A DNA stretch of 64,000 bases from NCBI RefSeq assembly GCF_963853765.1, contig NC_088854.1:22754001-22818000 (forward strand), read 5' to 3'. The notes beneath the pieces are model-generated. The model was not told the DNA's origin, made no database searches, and saw only the letters and a program-made list of their open reading frames with translations. This stretch comes from Magallana gigas. Lineage: Eukaryota. A program made the position numbers and the translations under genes. The stretch's first letter is position 1. Each line of letters begins with the position of its first letter. Of this stretch, positions 6,154 to 16,970 are shown piece after piece.

Positions 6154-6186
6154 AAGTTTCCGTTAAGACCTCACAAAAACCAGAAG
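6154..6186 (+). CDS. Candidate stalk exon of the membrane-protein gene (xVSVKTSQKPE)
   Basis: ttctag|...GAAG|gtaaca; 33 nt, phase 1-1, open, and joins the TM exon in frame. Confidence 0.55.
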
Positions 6187-6788
6187 GTAACAATTTGGCT
6201 CTACGTTGTTTGAGTGTACATACACTGTAGAATATAATTCTTTTTCTTAGTAGTTAATAAACTACAACAATTTCTATTACAATCTTAATCTTTCTTTCTG
6301 AAAAAAGTAACAAATACAAAGGGCTTGCTTTGGGTATGAGTTTTAACTGATTCCTATGTCTTTACTAATATTTCTAAAAATCTCAACTTTTGTTTGTCCA
6401 AATGCAAAAGCCGTTTATTTGACATCTAAATAATCAAGACAATGCAAGATTGTGATTTTTTTTCCTATAGTTGATTCTTTCCGAAAAATTAATATATATT
6501 CTGATGCAACTAGCAAAAGCAGTTGTGACTTTAAATAATTGCTACCAAGAAATCATTTGTGCACGATTATTTATACACCTTGTAAATCTTTTTTTCTCGA
6601 ACCAAATAAAAACAAAATTTGGATTATTGCTAACAATATAAAAAATGTCAATGAAATACATGTATGTAAATTGATATGCATAAAAAAATGCAAAAAAGTT
6701 TTTACATTATTTATCCAAAATTTTAGGAAGACAAAATAATTATTAACGTGCACAAATATAACGAAGTTTGCATCTTACTGTTTATCAG

Positions 6789-6920
6789 ATACTTTGACAT
6801 CGGTACAAGAACTGTCGTTTTCGACGATCATGGTGATTGCTGTAGCAGGGACCAGTATTACCATCATCATCTGTTTAACCGTGTGTTTGATTGTCTTCTG
6901 CAGGGGAAGGAAGGCACAAA
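6789..6920 (+). CDS. Transmembrane exon of a single-pass membrane protein (DTLTSVQELSFSTIMVIAVAGTSITIIICLTVCLIVFCRGRKAQ)
   Basis: tttatcag| acceptor and |gtgagt donor; 132 nt, phase 1-1. About 24 hydrophobic residues followed by basic RGRK, a type I stop-transfer signature. Confidence 0.82.
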
Positions 6921-7269
6921 GTGAGTTATATTTGACATTTGGACTGACGCCATCATCGAATCTAACTCATGTCTGAAAAGCTGACTCCAACTTTGGTCGC
7001 TTGTCTCTGCCAAGGTTGGGGCTAACTTTGTTTGGACATGATTCAAGAAATACTGTCCTGACTTTCGCTGAAAGCGGCAATCCATCTTTCAAGTCAAACA
7101 CAATTTAGCATACATTCTTCAATTTAAATTTTATGCTTGAAATATAAAATTGAAAGTTGTTAATTCATAAAAACGTAGTATGAATCATCAATCATCTTAA
7201 AAATAGAAATTGAGAGCAAATTATAAATTGTTTTATCATTTAGCAAATAACTTTTTAAATCTTTTTCAG

Positions 7270-7288
7270 AAAAGAAAAAAGATAACAG
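7270..7288 (+). CDS. 19-nt juxtamembrane micro-exon (KKKKDNR)
   Basis: ctttttcag|AAAAGAAAAAAGATAACAG|gtaaga. Phase 1->2, exactly the shift needed to link the TM exon to 7489-7628. Confidence 0.72.
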
Positions 7289-7488
7289 GTAAGAAACTCA
7301 TGCAGTTCATGAGTAGAATACACGCAATAACAAATACTTCAATTGAAAAAATAAATATTTTGCAGTTTCTAACTCCCACCAAGAACGATAACTATAAATT
7401 CAAAATATATAGATTATTTACTTTCATCAAGTTTTCAAATACCGCATGCTTCGCCCTACAACAATTGCTGATAATCGTCCTTTTATAG

Positions 7489-7628
7489 AAAGCACAGACA
7501 GAGTTCCCTAGGTGTGTCTACTCACCTGTACGATGAGGTGGAGTCCGTGGCCCGTAATGCATACTGTGAGCTAAACGAGGAGGCTCAGAAAACCTCCAAT
7601 CACCAGTACATACAGCCAATTCCTGAAG
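7489..7628 (+). CDS. Cytoplasmic exon with ITAM-like pair (KHRQSSLGVSTHLYDEVESVARNAYCELNEEAQKTSNHQYIQPIPE)
   Basis: ttttatag| ... GAAG|gttaga; 140 nt, phase 2->1. Only one frame is open. Confidence 0.8.
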
Positions 7629-8130
7629 GTTAGATTCCCCACCTTTCCCTACTGGTCTATTTTTCACCGTCTTTTTCACAAATCTTCAAGCCCTTTTCGT
7701 CAAATGCATTTTTGTGAAAAAAAGGTGGTTTGAACGATATGACATATTTCAATATGAAGCTAAATGAATATGAAGCAGTGTAAAACAGTAGTTTTAACAA
7801 TGCAAAAGATAACTGTCTTTTAAAATATTTAAAGTCACATTTAATGGTTATGAAATATAATTTTAAGTGTTATGCAAGAAGAAAAAGGGATAAAACGATT
7901 GAAGAATATAAAACCTTTAATAGATCTAGAATGATGTGACTCTATGTAAAGTATACATATCTGCACAGCCGAGAAAATCTTGCTAAAGATTTTAACTTCT
8001 ATTTGTTTTTTTACAAAATAAACAGTATGTATCAATAATTATACAGTGTAAGCGTTTAAGAAATAGTTTGCTAAACACAGAAAAATATTGTCATGAAACA
8101 TGAAAATATTTAAATCACTTATTTATATAG

Positions 8131-8217
8131 AAGCGCCAATGTACAAAGCCCCAGAAATCTTTTCAAACACGGAATCACCGACCAACATAAGGGCCAAGCC
8201 CCCAGATACTACGAATG
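8131..8217 (+). CDS. Cytoplasmic-tail exon (EAPMYKAPEIFSNTESPTNIRAKPPDTTN)
   Basis: ttatatag| ... AATG|gtatta; 87 nt, phase 1-1, open. Confidence 0.72.
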
Positions 8218-8432
8218 GTATTACAATCATTTTCTATTATCAATGCATGGTTTATGTTCAACATTATCATTGTTTAAAACCTTCAAATAATTTTTAGAAC
8301 CTAGAATCAATGATTAGGTTTAGTTTTCAATAACACACGTAACAATAATGTTAAACAAATGGGAGTTAGTTTTTTTACTGTTTTATTTCGGCAGAAGAAG
8401 CATATGAAATATATTTGTATTTTTTTTTGTAG

Positions 8433-8504
8433 ATGCTATGGGATATTTACAACCCTCCGTGAAATTTAGGCCAGAAATGGCAATGTTTAATCAGCTTTAT
8501 GAAG
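8433..8504 (+). CDS. Cytoplasmic-tail exon (DAMGYLQPSVKFRPEMAMFNQLYE)
   Basis: tttttttgtag| ... GAAG|gtaatg; 72 nt, phase 1-1, open. Confidence 0.78.
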
Positions 8505-8749
8505 GTAATGCAAATACTATAGCTAAAGAAGTATATTAAAGAGAAAACAATGATATGTGATGTAAATTGTAATTATCAATCAATAAACCATCAATTTTCT
8601 ATCAAATATAACAATTATTTTTTCGTAAAGAAAGGCAATTAAAAGAATCAAATATTTCACGCCAAAACATTAAACACGCGAACTATTCATTCAATAAATA
8701 TAGTATTTAAAGCATAAATAGTTAAACCAATTACATGTTTATCAAACAG

Positions 8750-14711: not shown

Positions 14712-15220
14712 ACGATGATGTTCATGTAGGCACACAGAAGCAAATCTAAAACCGGCAACCGCCACAGGGAGGGGGCATAATTTAATTTTTAATTTTGTTT
14801 GTAATAATTATATAGACCATTATACTTCCTATGACATAAAATGTTAAGATTATTGATTAACTGAAAATTCACTGCAAACAGTTCTACCCCAAATTGCACA
14901 TAAAGTGCTGCTCATGTCACGATGTGTATTATCATATGGGCAGGGATCTCATCCTTCAGTTATGAAAATTATAATTTTTAAATGTATTACCGGAGTTTGC
15001 ATGTAGCCTTCATTTTTAATTAAACTGGTATAAAACAGTGTTATTTAGGGGCAAACACATGGTGCGGGTATTACTGTCTAATGACAGCATCTAGTTATCA
15101 TTACAAACAAATGTAAACTATGCTAACAATACCAGATATTTGTTTAAGTAATGAGTTTAATATCTAAAAAATTACGAAACCTAAACTATTATATGAAAAA
15201 ACAATGATCTATGGCTTCAG

Positions 15221-15292
15221 ATTCCAGCAATATAACGCAACATGAGCCTATGTATGGTAATGAAAATAGAACGCCGCCTATACCAGTAAAAG
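15221..15292 (+). CDS. Cytoplasmic-tail exon (DSSNITQHEPMYGNENRTPPIPVK)
   Basis: ggcttcag| ... AAAG|gtacaa; 72 nt, phase 1-1, open. Confidence 0.72.
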
Positions 15293-15428
15293 GTACAAAA
15301 TACTCTTAGGATATATAATACAATTTAAAGGTTTATATCATATACAAATGTACATTTAAGTATTCAACCATGCTGAATTGATTTCATAGTTTGGCCTTAG
15401 TAATATATGTTTTATATAATTGATTTAG

Positions 15429-15488
15429 TTTTGAAAACAACGATTATTGAAAGGAAACAAAGTCAAAGAGAAACATCAAGCACAAACT
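15429..15488 (+). CDS. Cytoplasmic-tail exon (VLKTTIIERKQSQRETSSTN)
   Basis: Strong donor |gtaagt at 15489, weaker acceptor gatttag|; 60 nt, phase 1-1, open. Confidence 0.55.
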
Positions 15489-15630
15489 GTAAGTATACGT
15501 AAAACCACAAATAGATAGACATTGGTCCGTCGTTTTATATAGTTTGCTTCCTTTGTGAGTCTATATCATTTTGTAGGTGATAATCATTATTTAATATTTT
15601 AAAAATATTATCAAATTTGCTTTTTTTCAG

Positions 15631-15693
15631 CAACTACACCAAGTGTTCCTCCAAAACCAGTCTGTAGAATTATTCCAAACCAGTTATATGACG
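15631..15693 (+). CDS. Cytoplasmic-tail exon (STTPSVPPKPVCRIIPNQLYD)
   Basis: tttttttcag| ... GACG|gtaaat; 63 nt, phase 1-1, open. Confidence 0.78.
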
Positions 15694-15873
15694 GTAAATG
15701 TACATGTACATACATATATATATTCTAAGCAGATTTAAACAACATGTTATTTTTTGACATCCAGTTTAAACAAAGAACTTCTCAAACAACTTAACATTAC
15801 CTTTGTGAAAACATTTTGGAAAATGAGTTTAAAATGGTATCATCATCTGTAAAAAATTTTGAATTGGTTTTAG

Positions 15874-15951
15874 AGAGAGAAGGCATGTACAATAAAAAAA
15901 GACAAGTTATAGCAACCTACAGTAATCCCACAAAATTGCCAGCTAAAACAT
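15874..15951 (+). CDS. Cytoplasmic-tail exon (EREGMYNKKRQVIATYSNPTKLPAKT)
   Basis: ggttttag| ... ACAT|gtaagt; 78 nt, phase 1-1, open. Confidence 0.72.
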
Positions 15952-16175
15952 GTAAGTGATTGTAACAAAGAGAAAAAAAATCGGGTTTATTTTAACCAGA
16001 GCATATTTTCTAGTACACTACTTGTGACAACATATGTTTTCATTTGTAATATGATACATATTTTTAAAGGTTCAAAACAATGCATCAGTAACGATTATAA
16101 AAAAAAGGCAAACGCATTAACTTTTCGTGTATAGCGCTTTGTGTAATTTTCAACTGATCTCTGTATAATCCACAG

Positions 16176-16223
16176 ATTCCAGGTCCAAATCCGAAGATAC
16201 TGAGTTATCCCGCGTGCACTCAT
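16176..16223 (+). CDS. Cytoplasmic-tail exon (YSRSKSEDTELSRVHS)
   Basis: atccacag| ... TCAT|gtaagt; 48 nt, phase 1-1, open. Confidence 0.72.
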
Positions 16224-16962
16224 GTAAGTAAACACACAAATCAGATAGTGAGGTTGAAATATTTTTTATCCCATCTCTTACGATTAGTTCGGCATTTATG
16301 CATGGTCAGCTTTAGGAAGTGTATTATTCGGACAAATTGGCCAAATATTTGTCTGCTCTTTGCTCCCACGGTGCTCATCAACTTCTTTGTTTTTGATTAA
16401 AATCGGATGACTTTTTCCCATAGAGACAATCTCTCCCTTGCATATAGAATGATTCCCTTGAACAGTTGACCGTTTCTGTACCAAAAGTTCATTTTAAGCA
16501 GTATTCTGGGGAAAAAACCCAGATATTATTTTTACAAGTTTACTTTTTCAACGGAGATATTAACGAGAGACTAAAAAAACTGATTGTTTGTTTTTTTATT
16601 TGTTATTTGACAATCTGATAGTTATAAGACACCGTTGTCTTTCAAACTCTTAAATTGATCCCTTAGTTGTTCGGTCTCCACAGGGTTGTAAAGCAAAGTT
16701 TTGATTAATAAGCAGCAGAATGTTAAACATCAAAACAAAATACCCTACATGACTTAATCATGATTCATTTGTTTTCCTCGACTTAGTTGGCTTTCATTTT
16801 TTTAATTTTTGAAAGACAAATTGCAATAGCAATTTTGTTAAGTAATCAGTGTCATTTTATGCATGACTATCGTTGAACTGAATTTCAAAAATGGACAAAC
16901 AAAAAATCTTTACGGGGAATTCTCCATGTATTCGATTATATATACTTTTGTTCTGCTTTCAG

Positions 16963-16970
16963 ATAAATGA
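16963..16970 (+). CDS. Candidate terminal coding exon (YK*)
   Basis: ttttgttctgctttcag|ATAAATGA: a strong acceptor, phase-compatible, with AATAAA at 17068-17073. Very short, so weakly constrained. Confidence 0.5.

What the first reader, a model, noticed from the sequence alone, without database searches (positions are those of the whole stretch)
6154..16970. Hidden single-pass receptor with a modular, freely spliceable tyrosine-signalling tail
Seen: 15 GT-AG-bounded exons join into one open frame of ~340 aa with no internal stop, although only two fragments appear in the ORF track. After the TM helix comes a ~290-aa low-complexity tail with 14 tyrosines, three YxN motifs (YSN x2, YGN) and Pro-rich segments (PKPKKP, TPPIPVK, PSVPPKP). 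Ten consecutive tail exons are phase 1-1 and multiples of 3, so any subset can be skipped in frame. Established: pYxN binds Grb2-type SH2 domains, and PxxP with basic flanks binds SH3 domains. Inference: an immune or adhesion receptor, possibly of the expanded molluscan MEGF10/Draper/SREC-like type, whose docking-site repertoire could be tuned combinatorially by exon skipping. This is the best candidate for an undescribed system in the window. The ectodomain is not resolved here.
Basis: partly seen in the sequence, partly recalled or inferred. Interest (0 to 1): 0.75.

Follow-up and report, generated by a model that had tools for sequence, protein, structure and literature searches.

The report
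Oyster Ig receptor with tyrosine-motif tail
The 15 exons are real and expressed: they are the 3' part of a Pacific-oyster gene that RefSeq lists only as "uncharacterized protein", encoding a small one-Ig-domain membrane receptor whose long disordered tail carries conserved tyrosine docking motifs built by triplication of a three-exon block; exon skipping in the tail occurs but looks minor.

Summary
Observation confirmed. The 15 GT-AG exons at 6154-16970 (+) join into an open 339-codon frame. RNA contigs from three runs show the junctions from exon 2 to exon 10. The translation matches RefSeq XP_065931731.1 (Magallana gigas, "uncharacterized protein", 482 aa) with 0 of 339 differences. So the gene is annotated, not hidden, but it has no described function or family.

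The missing ectodomain is a signal peptide plus one I-set-like Ig domain (Z 12.7). It contains no EGF repeats, so the MEGF10/Draper/SREC idea fails. Transposon insertions absent from C. angulata pushed these exons off the window's left edge.

The tail is disordered. It keeps 11 of 14 tyrosines invariant across eight oyster lineages, in YDEV, YxxP, YxN, Y[ED]E and PxxPxK motifs. Exons 6-8, 9-11 and 12-14 are three copies of one module with matching phase-1 introns, which explains the exon symmetry.

Single skips of exons 5, 10, 11 and 14 occur in transcript models, each in one species. Only the extracellular stalk cassette is alternative in all annotated species. Most likely this is a nephrin/LAT-like phosphotyrosine docking receptor; combinatorial splicing is unproven.

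The parts
6154..6186 (+). Exon 1 of the window model (coding exon 4 of the gene): 33-nt extracellular stalk cassette (E)VSVKTSQKPE, phase 1-1, alternatively skipped
   Evidence: One search gives the coordinates. The exon is skipped in M. gigas isoform X3 (472 aa) and C. angulata X6. An RNA contig joins it to an upstream exon ending ...NITVPSKQQ (loose end at 6152). No residue is invariant across oysters.
6789..6920 (+). Exon 2: juxtamembrane segment, TM helix (IMVIAVAGTSITIIICLTVCLIVF) and the basic stop-transfer CRGRKAQ
   Evidence: contigs cover 6787-6920 at 100% identity. A helix at residues 164-192 appears in the full-length model.
7270..7288 (+). Exon 3: 19-nt microexon (KKKDN)
   Evidence: table 5c: 17 letters between joints 6920 and 7487, plus AG, reproduce it in three RNA runs. 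An A>G allele (N>S) is present in X6 and X7.
7489..7628 (+). Exon 4: the most conserved tail block, SSLGVSTHLYDEVESVARNAYCELN...HQYIQPIPE (YDEV, YCEL, YIQP)
   Evidence: phmmer with this exon found the gene's protein. 62% of its columns are invariant in 8 oysters. An alternative acceptor at 7493 (+4 nt) in one transcript contig shifts the frame and gives a 223-aa tail-less product.
8131..8217 (+). Exon 5: cassette with YKAPEIFSNTESP
   Evidence: Skipped in C. angulata isoform X7, 457 aa.
8433..8998 (+). Exons 6 (8433-8504), 7 (8750-8830) and 8 (8921-8998): repeat unit A (GYLQP ... NQLYEE | ANKPK..EPTYSN..FPKK | linker ..VVY)
   Evidence: hhalign of unit A against unit B gives E 1.9e-8, and against unit C E 7.5e-7.
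9115..9165 (+). Exon 9: start of repeat unit B (AQP...KSFCN). The NQLY of this unit survives in Saccostrea and Ostrea but has decayed in Crassostrea/Magallana.
15221..15488 (+). Exons 10 (15221-15292; EPMYGNE plus PPIPVK) and 11 (15429-15488; poorly conserved linker): the rest of repeat unit B
   Evidence: Exon 10 is skipped exactly (9165>15429) in transcript contig L002 from SRR8325610. Exon 11 is skipped in P0038, a related Crassostrea-type lineage.
15631..16223 (+). Exons 12 (15631-15693), 13 (15874-15951) and 14 (16176-16223): repeat unit C (TPSVPPKP..NQLYD | EREGMY..TYSNP..LPAKT | YSRSKSEDTELSRVHSY)
   Evidence: Exon 14 is skipped in O. edulis X4-X6. An alternative acceptor 7 nt inside exon 14 (window 16183) gives another C-terminus in C. 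angulata X1 and X5-X8. 75% of exon 14 is invariant.
16963..17041 (+). Exon 15: last codon (K), stop at 16968-16970, and 3' UTR to at least 17041
   Evidence: Transcript contig L002 aligns through 17041.
1..5103 (.). Inserted repeat block inside the intron between the second Ig exon and the stalk exon. It includes a 5'-truncated or decayed LINE on the minus strand at 2475-4954.
   Evidence: Window 5104 onward is collinear with C. angulata L001 15306, only 84 bp after the Ig exon that ends at L001 15222; window 1-5103 has no counterpart there. ORF 2846-3736(-) matches Pfam Exo_endo_phos with E 3.5e-9. RNA contigs break at 5103/5104.
9272..15094 (.). 5.8-kb composite repeat insertion that inflates intron 9. 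It is flanked by TTAT on both sides and holds a nested 1.25-kb element with 46-nt terminal inverted repeats (13022-13067 / 14226-14271).
   Evidence: Absent from the C. angulata locus. Inverted repeats. Very high repeat-derived RNA depth from 9265 on.

Best explanation
Window 6154-16970 (+) holds the last 15 of at least 18 coding exons of an annotated but uncharacterized oyster gene: RefSeq LOC105338401 of Magallana (Crassostrea) gigas, protein XP_065931731.1, 482 aa.

The protein is a type I membrane protein. It has a signal peptide, one I-set-like Ig domain, a short stalk with an alternatively spliced cassette, one TM helix, and a 290-aa intrinsically disordered cytoplasmic tail.

The tail is a string of short conserved motifs separated by variable linkers:
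- a membrane-proximal YDEV-x7-YCEL pair
- four or five YxxP
- three YxN
- three Y[ED]E
- two or three PxxPx[KR]
- an acidic Ser-rich C-terminus

Shown here: gene structure, expression, fold of the ectodomain, disorder of the tail, conservation of the motifs, and origin of exons 6-14 by triplication of a three-exon module.

Inferred: the Ig domain binds a ligand or a like molecule on another cell. Clustering then lets Src-type kinases phosphorylate the tail, which acts as a multivalent platform for SH2/SH3 adaptors. The likely partners are the Nck/Dock type at pYDEV, the Crk type at pYxxP, the Grb2/Drk type at pYxN, and SH3 domains at PxxPxK. This would couple adhesion or recognition to actin remodelling and MAPK signalling, as nephrin, LAT and vaccinia A36 do.

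The phase 1-1 symmetry of the tail exons is a by-product of tandem exon-block duplication. It permits in-frame skipping, which is seen for single exons at low frequency, but regulated combinatorial use is not shown.
For: Gene and expression:
- Exon model.
- RNA joints in three runs, and a raw-read strand pattern consistent with a + strand RNA.
- 0 of 339 differences to RefSeq isoform X2.
- A 68-member protein cluster, mostly from transcript assemblies.

Ectodomain:
- AF2 core pLDDT about 80.
- All Foldseek hits are Ig domains.
- VIA Z 12.7, rmsd 1.6 A over 92 residues to obscurin Ig1, then titin, twitchin, Dscam, DIP and basigin.

Tail disorder:
- pLDDT below 50 for residues 193-482.
- Hydropathy -1.19 and 70% disorder-promoting residues.

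Selection on motifs:
- 11 of 14 Tyr are invariant in 8 oyster lineages, against 39% of other tail residues (Fisher p 0.0045).
- Exons 4, 6 and 14 are 62-75% invariant, against 40% for the Ig domain.

Motif excess over shuffled tails:
- YxxP: 5 observed, 1.28 expected, p 0.005.
- YxN: 3 observed, 0.81 expected, p 0.04.
- Y[ED]E: 3 observed, 0.14 expected, p 0.00025.
- PxxPx[KR]: 3 observed, 0.39 expected, p 0.006.
- Nearly all of them are conserved in every species.

Triplicated module:
- hhalign A-B E 1.9e-8, A-C E 7.5e-7, B-C E 0.0018 in the same register; controls E 0.06-0.26.
- Introns fall after NQLY[ED] and after LPxK in all three units.

Analogues from the literature:
- Nephrin's tail tyrosines include YDEV (twice), YEES and YYSN (PMC3237483, table 2).
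- LAT and nephrin are membrane proteins with disordered tails that work by multivalent pTyr-SH2 binding; Nck plus Grb2 sites drive actin on A36 (PMC9333988).
- A Syk/ERK pathway downstream of an IgSF receptor exists in oyster haemocytes (PMC6994640).
Against: - No phosphorylation, binding partner, tissue or cell type was tested. Motif-to-SH2 assignments rest on vertebrate consensus preferences recalled from the literature.
- Pfam finds no Ig family, or any other family, in the protein.
- The canonical F-strand cysteine of the DxGxYxC signature is a leucine (DYGLYQL).
- The alignment behind the fold had only 8 sequences.
- The YxN and ITAM-like enrichments are marginal taken alone (p 0.04 and 0.07).
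- No relatives outside Ostreidae were found, so the function cannot be transferred from any studied homologue.
Confidence: 0.6

Rival explanations
1. One reading: the ten symmetric tail exons are cassettes used combinatorially and in a regulated way (by tissue or by challenge), so that the set of SH2/SH3 docking sites is tuned by exon skipping.
For: - All of exons 5-14 are phase 1-1 and multiples of 3.
- Exact in-frame skips are seen for exon 5 (C. angulata X7), exon 10 (M. gigas transcript contig L002, joint 9165>15429), exon 11 (P0038, 2 contigs) and exon 14 (O. edulis X4-X6).
- Exons 5 and 10 each remove a conserved Tyr motif.
- PECAM-1 sets a precedent: skipping cytoplasmic exon 14 removes a tyrosine and changes binding behaviour (PMC2132561).
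Against: - Each tail skip is seen in one species only, and never with a second tail exon skipped (O. edulis X5 and X6 pair the exon-14 skip with a stalk-cassette skip).
- Almost all full-length cluster members listed are the all-inclusive 482-485-aa form.
- RNA contigs from three runs show only full inclusion of exons 4-9, although contigs do drop rare variants.
- Symmetric exons let splicing noise escape nonsense-mediated decay, so rare skips are expected without regulation.
- Exon-block triplication accounts for the symmetry.
- The one alternative event conserved in all annotated species is the extracellular stalk cassette, not a tail exon.
Confidence: 0.15
2. It is an ITAM-type activating immunoreceptor. 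The invariant pair YDEV-x7-YCEL, once doubly phosphorylated, recruits the tandem SH2 domains of oyster Syk, as described for the five-Ig receptor CgIgR. The remaining tyrosines would be secondary.
For: - The pair has ITAM spacing (7 residues between YxxV and YxxL) and both tyrosines are invariant in 8 oysters.
- An ITAM-Syk-ERK route exists in oyster haemocytes (PMC6994640).
- Protein-atlas feature neighbours include BTLA and V-set immune receptors (a lead only).
Against: - The strict ITAM pattern [DE]xxYxx[LI]x6-12Yxx[LI] is not met in any of the 8 species. The first motif ends in V and has no acidic residue at -3.
- The relaxed pattern occurs by chance in 7% of shuffled tails.
- YDEV is the nephrin-type motif (PMC3237483), so a single-SH2 reading fits at least as well.
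- Most of the conserved tail lies outside this pair.
Confidence: 0.15
3. The tail is mainly a trafficking signal rather than a signalling scaffold. The unphosphorylated YxxPhi motifs (YDEV, YCEL) would bind AP adaptor complexes, and the Ser-rich acidic C-terminus (SRSRSEDSELS) would act as a kinase-regulated acidic-cluster sorting signal. The protein would then cycle between the surface and endosomes, as herpesvirus gE/gI-type glycoproteins do.
For: - The two membrane-proximal motifs fit YxxPhi.
- Exon 14, the acidic Ser cluster, is the best conserved exon at 75% invariant.
- The nearest protein-atlas feature neighbours are herpesvirus gI/gE, which are type I glycoproteins with such tails (score 0.90; a lead only).
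Against: - Nine of the eleven invariant tyrosines are not in YxxPhi context (YxxP, YxN, YEE).
- A 290-aa tail with a triplicated Tyr module is far more than sorting needs.
- The atlas recognition value of 2239 is below the 2300 level that 91 in 100 proteins of known families reach.
Confidence: 0.08
4. The model is a chance assembly of short open pieces, or a pseudogene, and not a functional gene.
For: The exons are short (19-140 nt) and the genome is AT-rich, so a tool-less reader could in principle stitch open pieces together.
Against: - Spliced RNA contigs in three independent runs.
- Identity to a RefSeq protein.
- One-to-one orthologues with conserved motifs in six named oyster species and two further lineages.
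Confidence: 0.01

Closest known systems
Nephrin (vertebrate NPHS1; Drosophila Sns/Hbs) as a phosphotyrosine scaffold
   Same: An IgSF type I membrane protein with a disordered tail carrying many tyrosines. The motif types are shared: YDEV, YEE-, YSN (nephrin table in PMC3237483). Multivalent SH2 docking is the proposed mode of action (PMC9333988).
   Different: Nephrin has eight Ig domains plus an FN3 domain and three YDxV sites. This protein has one Ig-like domain and one YDEV, and most of its sites are YxxP or YxN. No sequence homology was detected.
LAT and other transmembrane adaptor proteins; vaccinia A36
   Same: A single TM helix, a cysteine at the cytoplasmic end of the TM helix (invariant C191), and a long disordered tail with several YxN (Grb2-type) sites spaced 10-50 residues apart. 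A36 combines one Nck site with one Grb2 site (PMC9333988).
   Different: LAT has almost no ectodomain, whereas this protein has a folded Ig-like domain and N-glycosylation sites. No homology was found.
PECAM-1 (CD31) cytoplasmic exon organisation
   Same: An IgSF receptor with a short cytoplasmic exon that is alternatively spliced; skipping it (exon 14, 19 aa) removes a tyrosine and changes behaviour (PMC2132561). That several short exons encode the PECAM-1 tail is recalled from the literature and was not checked here.
   Different: PECAM-1 has six Ig domains and ITIMs, and this protein has no ITIM. PECAM-1 isoform use is documented experimentally, whereas here only single transcript models show skips.
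CgIgR of Crassostrea gigas (BCR-like IgSF receptor, PMC6994640)
   Same: Same organism. An IgSF type I receptor with a tyrosine pair in its tail. The Syk-ERK route shown for CgIgR could serve this protein too.
   Different: CgIgR has five Ig domains and a canonical ITAM (EGDYTELGQCDPETPYEKL). This protein has one Ig-like domain, a non-canonical pair (YDEV...YCEL) and a much longer multi-motif tail. It is a different gene.
MEGF10 / Draper / SREC
   Same: Single-pass receptors with tyrosine motifs in the tail.
   Different: That family is defined by EMI/EGF-repeat ectodomains and, for Draper/MEGF10, NPxY plus ITAM-like motifs. Here the ectodomain is Ig-like and there is no NPxY.

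Membership tests
Immunoglobulin superfamily (Ig-like domain) | Two-sheet Greek-key beta sandwich of the Ig type | tested here: met
   AF2 model of residues 25-141 has pLDDT about 80. 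VIA-align gives Z 12.7, rmsd 1.6 A, 92 of 94 residues of obscurin Ig1, and all 50 listed rows score Z 10 or more, nearly all to Ig-fold domains. All top Foldseek hits are Ig domains.
Immunoglobulin superfamily (Ig-like domain) | Significant match to a Pfam Ig-clan profile (ig, I-set, V-set, C2-set, Ig_3) | tested here: not met
   hmmscan of the whole protein and of residues 1-170 up to E = 10 returns no Ig-clan family.
Immunoglobulin superfamily (Ig-like domain) | Sequence signature: Cys (strand B) ... Trp (strand C) ... DxGxYxC (strand F) | tested here: inconclusive
   Invariant C43, W59 and D111-Y112-G113-x-Y115 are present, but the F-strand Cys is L117. Two other invariant cysteines (C91, C95) may pair with C38 and C43 instead.
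ITAM-bearing immunoreceptors | [DE]xxYxx[LI]-x(6-12)-Yxx[LI] in the cytoplasmic tail | tested here: not met
   The regex finds 0 matches in all 8 orthologues. Only the relaxed Yxx[LIV]-x(6-12)-Yxx[LIV] matches (YDEVESVARNAYCEL), with p 0.07 in shuffled tails.
ITIM/ITSM inhibitory receptors | [SIVL]xYxx[IVL] or TxYxx[VI] | tested here: not met
   0 matches in all 8 orthologues.
MEGF10 / Draper / SREC scavenger-type receptors | EMI and multiple EGF-like repeats in the ectodomain | tested here: not met
   The full protein has a 120-aa ectodomain with an Ig-like fold and no EGF or EMI hit.
MEGF10 / Draper / SREC scavenger-type receptors | NPxY motif in the tail | tested here: not met
   0 matches in all 8 orthologues.
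Multivalent phosphotyrosine scaffolds (a functional class: nephrin, LAT, A36) | Disordered membrane-anchored tail with several conserved SH2-consensus tyrosines | tested here: met
   Tail pLDDT is below 50. 11 of 14 Tyr are invariant. YDEV, YxxP, YxN and YEE motifs are conserved and enriched.
Multivalent phosphotyrosine scaffolds (a functional class: nephrin, LAT, A36) | Tyrosines are phosphorylated and bind SH2 adaptors | not testable with these tools
   Needs phosphoproteomics or binding assays.
PECAM-1-like modular cytoplasmic exons | Tail encoded by many short exons, some alternatively skipped with loss of a tyrosine | tested here: inconclusive
   13 tail exons. Single skips of the Tyr-bearing exons 5 and 10 occur in one transcript model each. 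Frequency and regulation are unknown.

The most novel reading that the evidence does not exclude
An oyster-restricted, nephrin/LAT-like condensate-forming receptor whose SH2-docking valency is set in two ways. Over evolutionary time it is set by gain and decay of a triplicated Tyr module: the middle NQLY site is lost in Crassostrea/Magallana but kept in Saccostrea and Ostrea. Within an animal it is set by regulated skipping of the Tyr-bearing cassette exons 5 and 10 and of the acidic C-terminal exon 14, for instance in haemocytes after challenge.
Probability: 0.12. Interest if true: 0.6.

Novelty: new member of a known kind. Interest (0 to 1): 0.35.

Why it matters
The gene sits in public annotation as one of thousands of oyster "uncharacterized proteins". 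This work gives it a concrete, testable identity: a one-Ig-domain receptor with a conserved array of phosphotyrosine and SH3 docking motifs, so far found only in Ostreidae.

If the docking model holds, it would be a compact invertebrate counterpart of nephrin/LAT-type scaffolds. It would also be a tractable case of a disordered signalling tail that grew by exon-block triplication.

For the scan, the lesson is that the striking exon symmetry reflects duplication history. The most consistently alternative exon is the extracellular stalk cassette, not the tail.

Tried and rejected
- Searched the window for the upstream exon sequence seen in an RNA contig: 0 matches with up to 3 mismatches. A local tblastn of the full protein found nothing for residues 1-142. 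The Ig exons are therefore outside the window.
- Rfam scan of the whole window: nothing.
- Earlier findings of this scan: nothing near, nothing by words.
- Pfam on the protein: only sub-threshold noise, such as TM-region look-alikes.
- Exact look-ups of the M. gigas isoforms and of C. angulata X2 for a genomic locus failed, because only the longest product is on record. C. angulata X1 worked.
- Literature searches for the LOC and XP identifiers: no paper.
- Checked whether CgIgR was the same gene: it is not; it has five Ig domains and a different ITAM.
- Homologues outside oysters: phmmer of exon 4 against 1.84 billion representatives gave only the gene itself, a C. virginica fragment and low-complexity repeats. 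The single-sequence and profile word-index searches returned oysters only. Those two searches see only proteins of 0.55-1.75 times the query length.
- The 535-aa UniProt model with an extended exon 3 (QTNNFLNLFQ) is not supported by the RNA joints.
- A 6151>9191 'joint' (table 5c) is a short chance match of an unrelated contig; its loose ends on both sides are unrelated sequence.
The only search made from the window was exon 4 by reference; later searches used stored database proteins. Exons were joined only inside local scripts, to check frame and identity.

Full report
**What is in the sequence**

Every exon has AG before it and GT after it. The pieces join into one open frame of 339 codons ending at the TGA at 16968-16970.

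Exons 5-14 measure 87, 72, 81, 78, 51, 72, 60, 63, 78 and 48 nt. All are multiples of three and all are phase 1-1. Exons 1 and 2 are also 1-1, and the 19-nt microexon 3 plus exon 4 are symmetric together. Ten such exons in a row has a naive probability of 1.7e-5.

**Is it a real gene?**

Yes. One read-laying run on window 5000-9300 with three RNA contig runs and one raw-read run shows these joints in all three contig runs:
- 6920 > microexon (letters AAAAGAAAAAAGATAAC or ...AGC, plus AG) > 7489
- 7628 > 8131
- 8217 > 8433
- 8504 > 8750
- 8830 > 8921
- 8998 > 9115

A loose end behind 9165 reads on into exon 10. A loose end before 6152 reads ...AACATCACCGTGCCATCCAAGCAACA, an in-frame upstream exon (NITVPSKQQ) that is not in the window. 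Exon depth is 5-10 times intron depth. The few raw reads over the exons have their first mate on the minus strand, as expected for a plus-strand RNA in the usual stranded library.

**Which gene?**

I searched exon 4 alone, by reference.

The best hit, P0001 (482 aa, 100% identical over the exon), belongs to a 68-member cluster. That cluster includes:
- RefSeq XP_065931731.1 and XP_065931732.1 ("uncharacterized protein", M. gigas isoforms X2 and X3)
- the older XP_011441804.2 (LOC105338401)
- C. angulata LOC128192469

The window's translation has 0 differences in 339 residues to XP_065931731.1. The gene is therefore annotated, not hidden. It has no name, no Pfam family and no paper that I could find.

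**The unresolved ectodomain**

The full protein starts with a signal peptide and about 120 extracellular residues. An AlphaFold model built on eight orthologues gives an all-beta core at pLDDT about 80. Every strong Foldseek hit is an Ig domain. VIA-align gives Z 12.7 and rmsd 1.6 A over 92 residues to obscurin Ig1, followed by titin, twitchin, Dscam, DIP and basigin domains.

This is one I-set-like Ig domain. It carries W59 and the DYGxY signature, but it has a leucine in place of the F-strand cysteine and four other invariant cysteines. There are no EGF repeats, so the MEGF10/Draper/SREC suggestion fails.

**Why the ectodomain is off the window**

In the C. angulata locus (L001) the whole gene spans 11.4 kb. 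The second Ig exon ends 84 bp before the point that corresponds to window 5104. Two parts of the window have no counterpart there:
- Window 1-5103, which includes the LINE with an endonuclease ORF.
- Window 9272-15094, a 5.8-kb composite repeat in intron 9 that holds a nested element with 46-nt inverted repeats.

The downstream neighbour is an innexin gene on the minus strand in both species.

**The tail**

The full-length model puts residues 193-482 below pLDDT 50. Tail composition is 70% disorder-promoting residues with a mean hydropathy of -1.19.

Orthologues were found only in oysters, one per species: M. gigas, C. angulata, C. virginica, Saccostrea echinata, S. cucullata, Ostrea edulis and two further transcript-only lineages. 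Identity across genera is 54-60%.

In an eight-lineage alignment, 11 of 14 tail tyrosines are invariant, against 39% of the other tail residues (Fisher p 0.0045). Exons 4, 6 and 14 are 62-75% invariant, which is more than the Ig domain at 40%. Exons 8, 9 and 11 are 6-10% invariant. The tail is thus a chain of conserved short motifs joined by free linkers.

Motif counts against 20,000 shuffles of the tail:

| Motif | Observed | Expected | p |
|---|---|---|---|
| YxxP | 5 | 1.28 | 0.005 |
| YxN | 3 | 0.81 | 0.04 |
| Y[ED]E | 3 | 0.14 | 0.00025 |
| PxxPx[KR] | 3 | 0.39 | 0.006 |
| Relaxed ITAM-like pair (YDEV-x7-YCEL) | 1 | 0.07 | 0.07 |

Strict ITAM, ITIM, ITSM, YxxM and NPxY motifs are absent in all eight species.

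**Origin of the exon symmetry**

Profile-profile alignment of the eight-species blocks gives these results:
- Exons 6-8 against exons 9-11: probability 95%, E 1.9e-8.
- Exons 6-8 against exons 12-14: probability 92%, E 7.5e-7.
- Exons 9-11 against exons 12-14: E 0.0018, in the same register.
- Controls with exons 4-5: E 0.06-0.26.

The shared module is NQLY[ED]-E...(P/T)TY(S/G)N...LPxK. A phase-1 intron follows NQLY[ED] and another follows LPxK in each of the three copies. In Saccostrea and Ostrea the middle copy still reads NQLYAEANK...EPTYGNE. In Crassostrea/Magallana its first tyrosine has decayed to KSFC.

Exons 6-14 are therefore a tandem triplication of a three-exon block. That alone explains why they are symmetric.

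**Alternative splicing**

Comparing isoforms within species gives the following.
1. The extracellular stalk cassette (window exon 1, 6154-6186) is alternative in every annotated species. O. edulis has two stalk cassettes, and its models include both together or either one alone. The RNA unitigs that begin exactly at 6787 in three runs fit a branch at this point.
2. There are four single tail-exon skips:
   - Exon 5 in C. angulata X7.
   - Exon 10 in one M. gigas transcript contig, with the joint exactly 9165 > 15429.
   - Exon 11 in P0038.
   - Exon 14 in O. edulis X4-X6.
3. There are three minor acceptor shifts:
   - +7 nt in exon 14, giving another C-terminus in C. angulata.
   - A 3-nt shift at exon 12.
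   - +4 nt at exon 4 in one contig, which shifts the frame and gives a 223-aa tail-less product.

No model skips two tail exons together, and no tail skip recurs across species. In-frame skipping is therefore possible and does happen. The data fit low-level skipping that survives because it stays in frame at least as well as they fit a regulated code.

**Most likely mechanism**

This part is inferred. The protein is an IgSF recognition or adhesion receptor whose phosphorylated tail recruits SH2/SH3 adaptors multivalently.

The YDEV, YEE- and YSN contexts also occur among nephrin's tail tyrosines (PMC3237483, table 2). LAT, nephrin and vaccinia A36 are the known examples of disordered membrane-anchored tails that work through Nck and Grb2 docking (PMC9333988).

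The assignments of YxxP to Crk-type SH2 domains, YxN to Grb2-type and PxxPxK to class II SH3 ligands are established consensus preferences that I cite from memory; they were not tested here.

An ITAM/Syk reading of the membrane-proximal pair is possible, because such a route exists in oyster haemocytes (PMC6994640). However, the strict motif is not met. A trafficking reading (YxxPhi plus the acidic Ser cluster) covers only a small part of the conserved tail.

**Limits**

- Only one 6-kb read-laying run was allowed, so exons 10-15 were supported through transcript contigs and RefSeq models rather than laid reads, and isoform proportions could not be measured.
- The fold rests on an eight-sequence alignment.
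- The restriction to Ostreidae rests on one 46-aa phmmer search and two length- and word-filtered searches.

**Verdict**

This is an annotated but uncharacterized, oyster-restricted member of a known kind: an IgSF receptor with a phosphotyrosine docking tail. Its evolutionary explanation, exon-block triplication, is clear. The splicing hypothesis remains open and is only weakly supported.

Noticed in passing
window 2475-4954 (-), within the 1-5103 block: Decayed LINE: an ORF1-like 287-aa ORF (4091-4954), an endonuclease ORF of 296 aa (2846-3736; Pfam Exo_endo_phos, E 3.5e-9) and a 139-aa fragment. The whole 1-5103 block is absent from the orthologous C. angulata intron. RNA contigs break at 5103/5104, so it may be an insertion polymorphism.
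   Followed up: partly
window 9272-15094: A 5.8-kb composite repeat inserted in intron 9, flanked by TTAT on both sides and absent in C. angulata. RNA depth jumps to 1200-2500 from about 9265, with many different loose ends, so the left-end repeat is abundant and transcribed genome-wide.
   Followed up: partly
window 13022-14271: A nested element of about 1.25 kb with 46-nt terminal inverted repeats (96% complementary), which looks like a non-autonomous DNA transposon.
   Followed up: no
window 19318-20289 (-) and onward to about 27000: Innexin gene on the minus strand (Pfam Innexin, E 6e-80 for the 323-aa ORF). It is the conserved downstream neighbour, also present in C. angulata (472-aa product).
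   Followed up: partly
window 7489-7493; locus L003: One transcript contig (SRR24489187) uses an acceptor 4 nt inside exon 4. This shifts the frame and ends the protein six residues later, giving a 223-aa form with Ig domain, TM helix and almost no tail. It could be a decoy isoform, a decay target or an allele with a 4-nt deletion.
   Followed up: partly
window 7270-7288: The 19-nt microexon carries an A>G polymorphism (Asn>Ser) in two of three RNA runs. The protein cluster shows about 10 substitutions per 339 residues between alleles (P0001 against the window), so the gene is quite polymorphic.
   Followed up: no
orthologue alignment, stalk region; window 6154-6186: The stalk cassette has no invariant residue across oysters, yet it is alternatively included in every annotated species, and O. 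edulis has two such cassettes. Its length, rather than its sequence, seems to be what is kept.
   Followed up: partly
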